A stretch of 64,000 nucleotides of DNA from Octopus bimaculoides (GCF_001194135.2 NC_068985.1:28377325-28441324), one strand, 5' to 3'. Numbered from the stretch's first letter, positions 45,189-45,239 are shown. Numbers and translations are program-made. Notes: generated by a model from the letters alone, not told the origin.

Positions 45189-45239
45189 AGATTCTATGAC
45201 ACCGGTGTTTCGATATTTGTGTCTCGTCAGCGAGAATCC
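45189..45239 (-). ncRNA. Type I minimal hammerhead ribozyme motif
   Basis: GGATTCTCG-CTGACGA-GACACAAATATC-GAAAC-ACCGGT-GTC^ATAGAATCT; palindromic stem III ACACCGGTGT; stem I has 7 bp but two mismatches next to the core. Confidence 0.65.

What the first reader, a model, noticed from the sequence alone, without database searches (positions are those of the whole stretch)
45189..45239. Type I minimal hammerhead ribozyme just upstream of, and co-oriented with, a Gypsy gag
Seen on the minus strand: GGATTCTCG-CTGACGA-GAC ACAAAT ATC-GAAAC-ACCGGT-GTC^ATAGAATCT. All core nucleotides are present, with a GUC site (cleavage between 45198 and 45197) and a perfect 10-nt palindrome ACACCGGTGT as stem III, the hallmark of HHRs that cleave as dimers. 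Stem I has 7 bp in register but two mismatches next to the core, so this copy may be crippled. It lies in a TG...CA-bounded ~290-bp segment (45155-45447) about 200 bp upstream of gag sequence on the same strand. Known: animal HHRs are mostly tied to Penelope pLTRs and non-LTR retrozymes, while plant retrozymes carry HHRs in Gypsy-dependent LTRs. Inference: either a cephalopod retrozyme or a Gypsy element with a ribozyme-bearing LTR, which to my knowledge is poorly described in animals.
Basis: partly seen in the sequence, partly recalled or inferred. Interest (0 to 1): 0.75.

Follow-up and report, generated by a model that had tools for sequence, protein, structure and literature searches.

The report
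Decayed solo hammerhead ribozyme repeat
A real but damaged copy of a self-cutting "hammerhead" RNA motif sits in a roughly 255-base hairpin-like repeat next to a broken piece of a Gypsy retrotransposon gene; it looks like a dead single copy of a known kind of animal mobile element, not a new ribozyme-carrying Gypsy LTR.

Summary
The hammerhead motif is real. Window 45239-45189 (minus strand) matches Rfam Hammerhead_1 at 30.7 bits, below the curated cut-off of 34. It is the only such hit in the window, and a relaxed descriptor gave 0 hits in 300 shuffles. All core nucleotides, the GUC^A site and the ACACCGGUGU palindrome are present. The copy is damaged: pairs 1.1-2.1 and 1.2-2.2 are mismatched and stem II has only 2 bp. 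The motif lies in a 255-nt self-complementary rod (45377-45123; z = -5.7 on the ribozyme strand). The "TG...CA LTR" is not supported. The TG is the last unit of a (TG)n microsatellite, and there is no second copy, PBS or pol in the window. The downstream gag is Gypsy-like but is a pseudogene fragment (about codons 23-180). Its conserved first 22 codons are absent, and recognisable similarity stops about 2 nt from the rod's last predicted pair (45123). Six loci carrying related gag genes (L001-L003, L005-L007) have no hammerhead. Best reading: a solitary, decayed unit of the animal type I hammerhead repeat class (non-LTR retrozyme or Penelope-derived) next to a Gypsy fragment in a transposon graveyard. 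No other copies from the same genome could be retrieved, so family-level tests remain open.

The parts
45189..45239 (-). Type I hammerhead ribozyme motif, degenerate. Stem I 5' strand 45239-45231; CUGACGA 45230-45224; stem II/loop 2 45223-45212; GAAA 45211-45208; palindrome ACACCGGUGU 45208-45199; C17 at 45198; stem I 3' strand 45197-45189.
   Evidence: Rfam RF00163 30.7 bits, E 7.7e-6 local and 1.4e-3 whole window. Descriptor hit unique in the window, 0 of 300 shuffles. Sequence read.
45123..45377 (-). 255-nt self-complementary (rod-like) non-coding element that contains the hammerhead. This is the likely extent of the repeat unit's structured core.
   Evidence: MFE -89.4 kcal/mol against shuffles -64.2 +/- 4.4 (z -5.7) on the ribozyme strand; -81.2 (z -3.3) on the other strand. 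Helix list. Only 2 of 60 random 255-nt segments reach z <= -5.7, both microsatellite. GC 46.7%.
45351..45369 (-). 5' arm of the 19-bp closing helix of the rod.
   Evidence: Inverted repeat I1, 84% complementary at the DNA level. The three DNA mismatches are G.U pairs on the ribozyme strand.
45128..45146 (-). 3' arm of the 19-bp closing helix. It marks the 3' end of the element, a few bases before gag similarity begins.
45293..45303 (-). Upstream GCAUGGGAUUC that pairs (11 bp) with 45194-45184. It competes with hammerhead stem I for the same 3' strand, giving an inactive rod conformer.
   Evidence: MFE helix list.
45378..45447 (-). 70-nt weakly structured stretch between the microsatellite and the rod. 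Whether it belongs to the element is uncertain.
   Evidence: With it the unit is 325 nt at 43.4% GC.
45445..45519 (.). (TG)n/(AC)n microsatellite, 37.5 units, abutting the element's 5' side.
   Evidence: Tandem Repeats Finder; sequence.
45520..46387 (.). Assembly gap of 868 N. Further units or the missing Gypsy 5' part could be hidden here.
44643..45121 (-). Neighbour, not part of the element: a Ty3/Gypsy-like gag pseudogene fragment (about codons 23-182). It has an in-frame stop at 44872-44870 and a frameshift near 44790, and it lacks codons 1-22 and everything after about codon 182.
   Evidence: phmmer gave 1415 hits, best 8e-31. Profile alignment covers HMM 23-132 and 131-182. tblastn hits fall only at 44647-45151. 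Homologues are gag-PR-RT-RNaseH(-integrase) proteins. An N-terminal mini-HMM finds nothing in the window.

Best explanation
The locus holds a solitary, mutationally decayed unit of an animal type I hammerhead repeat. This is the class described as non-LTR retrozymes, which are thought to be non-autonomous derivatives of Penelope-like elements.

Shown here: a complete hammerhead core of the canonical animal type, embedded in a 255-325-nt non-coding, strongly self-paired segment.

Inferred from the published life cycle:
- Active relatives are transcribed as multimers.
- Each hammerhead cuts after GUC, here between 45198 and 45197. Because helix III is a 10-nt palindrome, the cut is probably made as a double hammerhead formed between two units.
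- The unit-length RNA is circularised by a host RNA ligase into a rod-like circle.
- A Penelope-like reverse transcriptase copies the circle back into DNA.

This copy is very probably dead. It has no partner unit in the sequenced DNA. Its stem I is mismatched at 1.1-2.1 and 1.2-2.2, stem II is 2 bp, and the rod conformer out-competes the ribozyme fold.

Its position next to, and co-oriented with, a gag is best read as chance adjacency of nested or truncated transposon fragments. The gag is a Gypsy pseudogene fragment cut off at both ends.
For: Motif identity:
- Rfam Hammerhead_1, 30.7 bits, full-length match 1-45/45, including loop 2 CAAAUA, which the core definition does not require.
- It is the only hammerhead hit in 64 kb, and the descriptor gave 0 hits in 300 shuffles.
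- Canonical metazoan type I hammerheads have helix I of about 6 bp, helix II of 4 bp, and a short helix III capped by a palindromic loop, and they work as dimers (PMC4209133). Most of them lie in 170-400-nt, low-GC, highly self-paired non-LTR retrozymes (PMC7229834).

Fit of this element to that description:
- Size 255-325 nt and GC 43-47%.
- Rod fold with z -5.7, 8 kcal/mol more stable on the ribozyme strand, with G.U pairs at all three DNA mismatches of the 19-bp closing helix.
- No Pfam domain in the ORFs that cross it and no tRNA.
- Monomeric, non-transposing retrozyme derivatives scattered along chromosomes are reported as common (bioRxiv 10.64898/2026.07.22.740005, read).

Independence from the Gypsy fragment:
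- gag codons 1-22 are better conserved among 58 homologues than codons 35-75 (2.49 against 2.0 bits per column).
- An N-terminal mini-HMM scores true homologues 18.6 bits at the lowest (mean 35 bits), but its best match anywhere in the window is -4.1 bits.
- Recognisable gag similarity stops at 45121 and the rod's last predicted pair is at 45123.
- There is no pol anywhere in the window.
Against: - Only one copy could be examined. No tandem partner, no family consensus and no covariation are available, and no copy from the same genome could be retrieved.
- The score is below Rfam's gathering threshold.
- The monomer does not fold as a hammerhead: -1.3 kcal/mol for the ribozyme fold against an MFE of -9.4, and z +0.55 for the 71-nt context. 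The double-hammerhead fold (-22.9) is also below the dimer MFE (-28.5).
- The rod boundaries were chosen after seeing the fold, so z -5.7 is somewhat optimistic. The unselected 328-nt stretch gave z -3.3.
- No Penelope-like RT or endonuclease is present in the window.
- The open reading frame running from 45169 through the junction into gag, and the near-coincidence of the predicted gag start (about 45184) with the ribozyme's 3' end, are unexplained coincidences under this reading.
Confidence: 0.55

Rival explanations
1. The segment is the 3'-terminal remnant (pseudo-LTR region) of a 5'-truncated Penelope-like element rather than a retrozyme unit. In Penelope-like elements the hammerhead lies in the terminal repeat and is thought to process tandem transcripts.
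For: - Hammerheads are a regular feature of Penelope-like pLTRs, and most genomic copies are single motifs from truncated elements (PMC4209133).
- Penelope-like elements favour microsatellite targets (PMC8557442), and the segment abuts a (TG)n array.
- A metagenome contig (L004) carries the same helix III palindrome in a hammerhead between the RT ORF and the next unit's ORF1. The element there is a tandem, Penelope-like retroelement with a 4845-bp unit.
- Retrozymes and pLTRs are reported to be phylogenetically intermingled, so the two readings overlap.
Against: - The motif is of the canonical type: 4-bp-type helix II with loop CAAAUA, and no bulged base after A9. Metazoan Penelope-like elements are described as carrying the 'min-HHR' type, with helix II of 6-8 bp, helix I of 4-5 bp and an extra base between 9 and 10.1 (PMC4209133).
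- The 208 nt upstream show no RT or GIY-YIG coding similarity, and there is none elsewhere in the window.
- Microsatellites are everywhere in this window, so the (TG)n contact carries little weight.
Confidence: 0.22
2. One reading: the hammerhead belongs to the LTR or 5' leader of a Gypsy element. That would be an animal counterpart of plant LTR retrozymes, or a 5'-processing ribozyme placed just before gag.
For: - The motif and gag share a strand and are close: gag similarity starts 68 nt after the motif.
- The gag start extrapolated from homologues (about 45184) falls at the ribozyme's 3' edge.
- The closest gag relatives appear to have very short LTR-plus-leader regions, about 300 bp between pol and gag in L006 and L007. 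That is similar in size to the segment.
Against: - The segment is not repeated in the window.
- The 'TG' is microsatellite, and the 'CA' lies inside a hairpin arm.
- There is no primer-binding site or tRNA match.
- gag codons 1-22 are missing, so continuity from LTR to gag is broken.
- There is no pol in the window.
- Six loci carrying related gag genes contain no hammerhead by Rfam or by descriptor. The same descriptor did recover the two L004 motifs.
- The relatives' upstream regions do not align with the window segment, z -1 to 2. At 50-58% protein identity, LTR sequence would not be expected to align anyway.
Confidence: 0.05
3. The ribozyme module and the gag fragment form one composite repeat. 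It could be a chimeric retrocopy made by template switching between a hammerhead RNA and a Gypsy RNA, or a non-autonomous element that captured a gag piece, and it may have been amplified as a unit.
For: - The junction is sharp, and the rod's 3' end is about 2 nt from the first recognisable gag codon.
- The two parts are co-oriented.
- An open frame runs across the junction from 45169 to 44873.
Against: - This is a single observation. A frame of 99 codons across a junction is not unusual.
- The gag piece is itself cut off at about codon 182 by other transposon debris: a DUF7041 gag-like fragment on the other strand.
- No copies are available to test recurrence.
Confidence: 0.08
4. The hammerhead resemblance is a chance match inside an unrelated palindromic repeat, for example a MITE-like foldback element.
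For: - The score is below Rfam's gathering threshold.
- Stem II and the inner part of stem I are defective.
- The ribozyme fold is not the predicted structure.
- The element is a long imperfect inverted repeat.
Against: - E is about 3e-7 per window for this family (divided by 4227 families), which extrapolates to roughly 0.01-0.02 for a genome of a few Gb.
- The descriptor gave 0 of 300 shuffles.
- Agreement extends to the non-core loop 2 CAAAUA and to the palindromic helix III typical of animal hammerheads (PMC4209133).
- The fold is more stable on the ribozyme strand, through G.U pairs.
Confidence: 0.07

Closest known systems
Metazoan non-LTR retrozymes (Cervera & de la Pena 2020, PMC7229834; Li et al. 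2026 preprint 10.64898/2026.07.22.740005)
   Same: Canonical type I hammerhead. Unit size in the 170-400-nt range. GC below 50%. Non-coding, with a strongly self-paired predicted RNA. No LTR, PBS or PPT. Dispersed monomeric dead copies are reported. The class is already described in a mollusc (mussel).
   Different: No tandem array is seen here: one unit, beside a gap. The ribozyme is degenerate. No circular RNA or expression evidence exists. The family consensus is unknown, and the host organism is unverified.
Minimal hammerheads in the pseudo-LTRs of Penelope-like elements (Cervera & de la Pena 2014, PMC4209133; Craig et al. 2021, PMC8557442)
   Same: Type I topology. A palindromic helix III that implies dimeric cleavage. 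Mostly found as single motifs from truncated copies. Association with microsatellites. L004 shows the identical helix III palindrome in a tandem RT-encoding element.
   Different: The helix II/loop 2 architecture is canonical rather than 'min-HHR'. There is no bulged base after A9. No Penelope-like ORF is adjacent or anywhere in the window.
Plant LTR retrozymes (Cervera et al. 2016, PMC4918200)
   Same: A hammerhead in a non-coding retroelement linked to Gypsy biology. The ribozyme is masked by a complementary strand in a rod-like RNA.
   Different: Plant elements carry type III hammerheads in two LTRs, with PBS, PPT and 4-bp target duplications, and have GC above 55%. None of these features is present here.
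Amphibian satellite 2 / Schistosoma Sm-alpha canonical type I hammerheads (Rfam RF00163)
   Same: Full-length alignment to the family model. Loop 2 CAAAUA. A short helix III with a palindromic loop.
   Different: The 3' strand of stem II has lost two positions. The two innermost pairs of stem I are mismatched. The score is 3.3 bits under the family threshold.

Membership tests
Hammerhead ribozyme, type I (Rfam RF00163) | Conserved core C3U4G5A6N7G8A9 / G12A13A14 / A15.1-U16.1 / H17 | tested here: met
   All present: CUGACGA, GAAA, A-U, C17.
Hammerhead ribozyme, type I (Rfam RF00163) | Three helices around the core, with helix I open-ended | tested here: inconclusive
   Helix I has 7 bp, but 1.1-2.1 (A.G) and 1.2-2.2 (U.C) are unpaired. 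Helix II has 2 bp. Helix III has 3 bp plus a CCGG loop, or a 10-bp palindrome in a dimer.
Hammerhead ribozyme, type I (Rfam RF00163) | Score at or above the curated gathering threshold (34 bits) | tested here: not met
   30.7 bits.
Hammerhead ribozyme, type I (Rfam RF00163) | Self-cleavage activity | not testable with these tools
   Needs in vitro transcription of monomer and dimer constructs.
Metazoan non-LTR retrozyme | Canonical type I hammerhead inside the unit | tested here: met
   The architecture matches the 'canonical' description in PMC4209133 apart from the damage.
Metazoan non-LTR retrozyme | Short (about 170-400 bp) head-to-tail tandem repeats | tested here: not met
   No second copy in the window. 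An 868-N gap lies beyond the adjacent (TG)n array, so this is not excluded. Monomeric derivatives are reported as common.
Metazoan non-LTR retrozyme | Low GC (below 45-50%) and non-coding | tested here: met
   GC 43.4-46.7%. No Pfam hit or homologue for any frame.
Metazoan non-LTR retrozyme | Highly self-paired unit-length RNA | tested here: met
   z -5.7 for 45377-45123 and z -3.3 for the unselected 328 nt.
Metazoan non-LTR retrozyme | Expression as linear and circular RNA | not testable with these tools
   No transcriptome access.
Penelope-like element pseudo-LTR | Hammerhead in a terminal repeat flanking an RT(-GIY-YIG) ORF | tested here: not met
   No RT or endonuclease similarity upstream of the motif or elsewhere in the window. 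A truncated copy would lack it, so this does not exclude a Penelope-like origin.
Penelope-like element pseudo-LTR | Metazoan 'min-HHR' architecture: long helix II, short helix I, extra base between 9 and 10.1 | tested here: not met
   The alignment shows canonical spacing and loop 2. Criteria are from PMC4209133.
LTR retrotransposon LTR (Gypsy) / LTR retrozyme | Two direct terminal repeats | tested here: not met
   Self-blastn of 44800-45460 against the window found only microsatellite hits.
LTR retrotransposon LTR (Gypsy) / LTR retrozyme | Primer-binding site after the 5' LTR, then leader and an intact gag start | tested here: not met
   No tRNA-complementary site (inspection). gag codons 1-22 are absent.
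LTR retrotransposon LTR (Gypsy) / LTR retrozyme | Hammerhead present in LTRs of related elements | tested here: not met
   None in L001-L003 or L005-L007. These relatives are distant, at 41-58% gag identity.
Ty3/Gypsy gag (the neighbouring fragment) | Homology to the gag of gag-PR-RT-RNaseH-integrase polyproteins | tested here: met
   1415 phmmer hits. Homologues carry gag-asp_proteas, RVT_1, RT_RNaseH and rve domains.

The most novel reading that the evidence does not exclude
The ribozyme module and the gag are functionally joined. In this reading a Gypsy-derived lineage, or a non-autonomous derivative of one, has had its 5' LTR, leader and first 22 codons replaced by a hammerhead-bearing rod. 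Transcripts would then be cut about 18 nt upstream of an ATG at 45179. That would be an animal, type I counterpart of plant LTR retrozymes, or a hammerhead analogue of the 5' HDV-like ribozymes of non-LTR retrotransposons.
Probability: 0.05. Interest if true: 0.7.

Novelty: new member of a known kind. Interest (0 to 1): 0.2.

Why it matters
If the family reading holds, this is one more fossil copy of the type I hammerhead repeats already described across invertebrates, including a mollusc. It adds little beyond noting that such repeats are present in this genome. I found no paper in the held library that describes hammerheads or retrozymes in cephalopods, so a genome-wide census there would be a modest but new catalogue entry. 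It would matter only if other copies showed a recurrent physical link between the ribozyme module and Gypsy gag, which the present evidence argues against.

Tried and rejected
Attempts to find same-genome or close copies all failed:
- An exact look-up of the 91-aa ORF.
- A word-indexed protein search with the uncorrected gag.
- The same search with all six frames of 45120-45452 concatenated, hoping that ORFs had been called on paralogous copies.
- The same search with the frameshift-corrected gag. It gave only shrimp and metagenome relatives at 57% identity or less over partial alignments, and none from a cephalopod.
- An exact 23-mer scan of JGI metagenomes.
- Pattern scans of viral and prokaryotic collections.
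- Cluster listings, which showed mostly unnamed metagenome proteins.

Other dead ends and ideas I rejected:
- Literature string searches for the motif returned only cloning-oligo noise.
- A PBS reading of TGGTTTAGATTCACGGGTCC upstream of the motif was rejected, because the stems that a tRNA 3' end would imply do not pair, and ARAGORN finds nothing.
- Kinship between the ribozyme and the nearby 249-bp tRNA-like SINE tandem at 46895-47401 was rejected. The shared ACACCGG and CGAAA strings are in the opposite order, and blastn shows no similarity.
- An apparent CTGAAGAG...CGAAAC pair upstream of gag in L001 failed the helix checks of the descriptor and the Rfam search.
- Nucleotide-level absence of gag codons 1-22 is not decisive on its own, because codons 23-75 also fail to align at the DNA level. 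The protein mini-HMM test is the one I rely on.
- The bacterial promoter/terminator scan is irrelevant here and found nothing.
- The identity of L004 as a true Penelope-like element was not proven. It has only a Pfam RVT_1 hit and no PDB match.

Full report
**1. The observation**

On the minus strand, 45239-45189 reads GGAUUCUCG CUGACGA G-AC-ACAAAUA-UC GAAA CACCGGUG UC^AUAGAAUCU. GUC is at 45200-45198, so cleavage would fall between 45198 and 45197, and the palindrome ACACCGGTGT is at 45208-45199.

Rfam's default (gathering) search of the window returns nothing. With E-value thresholds, the segment 45236-45192 aligns end to end (model positions 1-45 of 45) to RF00163 Hammerhead_1 at 30.7 bits against a curated cut-off of 34. 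E is 7.7e-6 in a 361-nt search and 1.4e-3 in the whole window against all 4227 families. It is the only hammerhead hit. The other 128 sub-threshold hits are microsatellite look-alikes of miRNA and snoRNA models.

Dividing by the number of families gives about 3e-7 per 64-kb window for this family. That extrapolates to about 0.01-0.02 for a genome of a few Gb (my arithmetic).

I also wrote a relaxed descriptor: core boxes, G10.1-C11.1, helix II of at least 2 bp, helix III of at least 2 bp, helix I of at least 4 bp, and up to 2 unpaired inner positions. It hits only this site in the window and gave 0 hits in 300 dinucleotide-preserving shuffles of the window. The motif is therefore more than chance.

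**2. Quality of this copy**

The Rfam alignment marks four non-canonical pairs:
- two pairs in helix II, where the consensus GUCC-CAAAUA-GGAC has become GACA-CAAAUA-UC.

The copy does not prefer the ribozyme fold:
- Folded alone, the 51-mer does not take the ribozyme fold as its MFE structure: the ribozyme fold is -1.3 kcal/mol and the MFE is -9.4.
- The 71-nt context has z = +0.55 against shuffles.
- A domain-swapped double hammerhead that uses the 10-bp palindrome reaches -22.9 kcal/mol, against a dimer MFE of -28.5.

The architecture is the 'canonical' animal type I design: loop 2 CAAAUA, no extra base between A9 and G10.1, and a short helix III with a palindromic loop. It is not the 'min-HHR' design described for metazoan Penelope-like elements, which has helix II of 6-8 bp, helix I of 4-5 bp and a bulged base after position 9 (PMC4209133).

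**3. The element around the motif**

The 328 nt between the microsatellite and gag fold far better than shuffles: -94.9 against -77.7 +/- 5.2 kcal/mol, z -3.3.

The helices form a rod. A 19-bp helix pairs 45369-45351 with 45146-45128, followed by helices of 3, 4, 4, 5, 6, 3 and 11 bp. The rod closes at 45377/45123, and the hammerhead sits at the distal end.

For 45377-45123 (255 nt), the MFE is -89.4 (z -5.7) on the ribozyme strand and -81.2 (z -3.3) on the other strand.

The 19-bp helix is 84% complementary as DNA. Its three mismatches are all G.U pairs on the ribozyme strand, which hints at RNA-level structure on that strand.

The 3' strand of hammerhead helix I (45197-45189) is also part of an 11-bp helix with GCAUGGGAUUC at 45303-45293. 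A rod conformer therefore competes with the ribozyme conformer.

As a calibration, 2 of 60 random 255-nt pieces of the window reach z <= -5.7, and both are microsatellite palindromes. I chose the rod's ends after seeing the fold, so the unselected z of -3.3 is the conservative figure.

GC is 46.7% for the 255 nt and 43.4% for the 325 nt, against 37.2% for the window. There is no tRNA-like sequence. The ORFs crossing the element have no Pfam domain, and no frame has a protein homologue.

**4. The 'LTR' claim**

- The TG at 45447-45446 is simply the last unit of a 37.5-unit (TG)n array at 45445-45519, which is followed by an 868-N gap.
- The CA at 45156-45155 lies in the middle of the rod's 3' arm and inside a small hairpin.
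- Self-blastn of 44800-45460 against the window finds no second copy.
- No primer-binding site follows.

The segment therefore has none of the marks of an LTR.

**5. The gag**

A frameshift-corrected translation of 45169-44640 finds 1415 proteins at E <= 1e-3 among 1.84 billion representatives, the best at 8e-31 and 58% identity. The long homologues are gag-protease-RT-RNaseH proteins (Pfam gag-asp_proteas, RVT_1, RT_RNaseH). The locus of the closest family (L005) has a 171-aa gag followed by a 1027-aa pol with an rve integrase domain. The 'Gypsy-like gag' is confirmed.

It is only a fragment, however:
- A profile of 58 N-terminally complete homologues aligns positions 23-132 to 45118-44789 and, after a frameshift, positions 131-182 to 44794-44643.
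- There is an in-frame stop at 44872-44870.
- tblastn with long homologues hits nothing else in the window, so there is no protease, RT or integrase.
- Past about codon 182, the DNA carries an oppositely oriented DUF7041 gag-like fragment.

The family's N-terminus has the consensus MdK.LRPeRFD.DPnSp.AaKeW. It is better conserved (2.49 bits per column) than codons 35-75 (2.0 bits), which are still recognisable in the window. A mini-HMM of those 22 residues scores true homologues 18.6 bits at the lowest (mean 35 bits), but its best match anywhere in the six frames of the window is -4.1 bits.

Recognisable gag therefore begins at 45121 (RWQAYFTFE), and the rod's last predicted pair is at 45123. 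The two features abut at a sharp junction, and the Gypsy 5' end is absent from all sequenced DNA here.

One caveat applies. At the DNA level only codons from about 71 onward align with relatives, so the argument rests on the protein profile.

**6. Do related Gypsy elements carry hammerheads?**

I fetched six loci encoding related gags: L001, L002, L003, L005, L006 and L007. L006 and L007 read pol, about 300 bp, then gag. This is the usual collapsed assembly of an LTR element and implies a short LTR plus leader.

Neither Rfam at E <= 1 nor my descriptor finds a hammerhead in any of them. The descriptor does recover two bona fide motifs in L004, which Rfam missed at E <= 1.

The relatives' LTR/leader sequences have no similarity to 45447-45119 (z -1 to 2), whereas the gag parts align at z 13-28.

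These relatives are distant, and no cephalopod relative exists in the protein collections. The test therefore argues against the LTR reading but does not exclude it.

**7. Where the same ribozyme variant occurs**

A scan of JGI metagenomes for CTGANGAG-N8-16-CGAAACACCGGTGTC gave one contig, L004. The motif occurs twice there, 4845 bp apart, inside a perfect 300-nt direct repeat. Each copy lies between the end of a 705-aa RT ORF and a 599-aa ORF1.

That is the tandem 'pseudo-LTR' layout described for Penelope-like elements. I could not prove that the RT is Penelope-like.

The contig shows that a hammerhead upstream of, and co-oriented with, a first ORF is the normal geometry in tandem retroelements of that kind. 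It also shows that this helix III palindrome is not peculiar to the window. The viral and prokaryotic collections have no match.

**8. Interpretation**

The features shown fit the published description of metazoan non-LTR retrozymes: 170-400-nt, low-GC, highly self-paired units with a type I hammerhead and no LTR, PBS or PPT (PMC7229834). Those features are a canonical type I hammerhead, a 255-325-nt non-coding unit, moderate GC, rod-like self-pairing that is stronger on the ribozyme strand, and a palindromic helix III.

A 2026 preprint reports that such elements derive from Penelope-like pseudo-LTRs. It also reports that monomeric, non-mobile derivatives are scattered evenly along chromosomes.

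I therefore read the locus as a solitary, decayed unit of that class (confidence 0.55). A truncated Penelope-like 3' end is the near-equivalent rival (0.22). The inferred mechanism is taken from the literature and is not shown here:
- multimeric transcription;
- dimeric hammerhead cleavage after GUC;
- ligation into a circular RNA;
- reverse transcription by a Penelope-like RT.

This copy is very probably inactive. The Gypsy-LTR reading (0.05), a composite or chimeric unit (0.08) and a chance motif in a foldback repeat (0.07) remain as minor rivals.

**9. Limits**

- The organism is unverified.
- Two coincidences remain unexplained: the frame that stays open across the junction, and the fact that the gag start extrapolated from homologues (about 45184) falls at the ribozyme's 3' edge. 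These keep the composite reading alive at low probability.

**10. Verdict**

The 'ribozyme-bearing Gypsy LTR' half is not supported. This is an ordinary fossil of a known class, of low interest unless a genome-wide search shows a recurrent junction between the ribozyme module and gag.

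Noticed in passing
window 43834-44580 (+): A gag-like fragment of a different retroelement on the opposite strand (Pfam DUF7041, E 1.2e-4, below the cut-off). It lies directly after the truncated Gypsy gag, which indicates nested or broken transposon debris.
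   Followed up: partly
window 46895-47401 (+): Two tandem copies (period 249 bp, 84% match) of a repeat with a tRNA-like T-arm string (GAGTTCAAATTCCGCCGAGGTCGAC). It is probably a SINE. Related ORF translations (RNTAKHFAR...) recur near 47440-47680, 52920-53140, 56800-57020 and 59760-60340. It is not related to the hammerhead segment.
   Followed up: partly
window 48224-48387 and 48579-48663: A 14-bp minisatellite (TATCGCGGTTCACC; 11.7 and 6.1 copies at 97-100% match) split by a 47-N gap.
   Followed up: no
window 20043-20393 (-) and 19588-19959 (-): A reverse-transcriptase fragment (Pfam RVT_1, E 3e-5, below the cut-off). It looks like a non-LTR/LINE-type RT remnant and is not Penelope-like by eye.
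   Followed up: no
window 53631-54414 (-): Another gag-like remnant with a CCHC zinc knuckle (Pfam zf-CCHC, E 1.6e-5). It is unrelated to the gag at 44643-45121: tblastn with the Gypsy homologues did not hit it.
   Followed up: no
window 49131-49343 (-) and 50560-50865 (+): Tc1/mariner transposase remnants: the HTH_48 domain of Mos1-type transposases (E 1e-9) and HTH_Tnp_Tc3_2 (E 5e-5).
   Followed up: no
window, many sites (e.g. 13770-14110, 53380-53460, 58120-58600): About 125 sub-threshold Rfam 'miRNA/snoRNA' hits (mir-297, mir-3149, mir-466 and others) all fall on TG/TA/CA microsatellites and are artefacts. The window has 22 N-gaps totalling 4079 bases, and many of these gaps adjoin microsatellite repeats.
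   Followed up: partly
L004 147-192 and 4992-5037 (-): A metagenome contig carries a tandem RT-encoding element (unit 4845 bp) with a well-formed type I hammerhead in each inter-unit repeat: helix I 6 bp, helix II 4 bp, and the same ACACCGGUGU palindrome. Rfam's models did not report these motifs even at E <= 1, so Rfam-negative results for hammerhead variants should be read with care.
   Followed up: partly
L006 2596-2914; L007 1654-1950: The closest available relatives of the gag read pol, about 300 bp, then gag in metagenome contigs. This implies a very short LTR plus leader. A conserved hairpin-like leader (AAAGTTGCAATAAAC...TTATTGCAACT) precedes the gag ATG.
   Followed up: no
window 45179-45042 (-): An ATG 18 nt downstream of the predicted cleavage site opens a 45-codon frame (MSLVCYKHNS...) with no detectable homology. 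It is out of frame with the gag similarity.
   Followed up: partly
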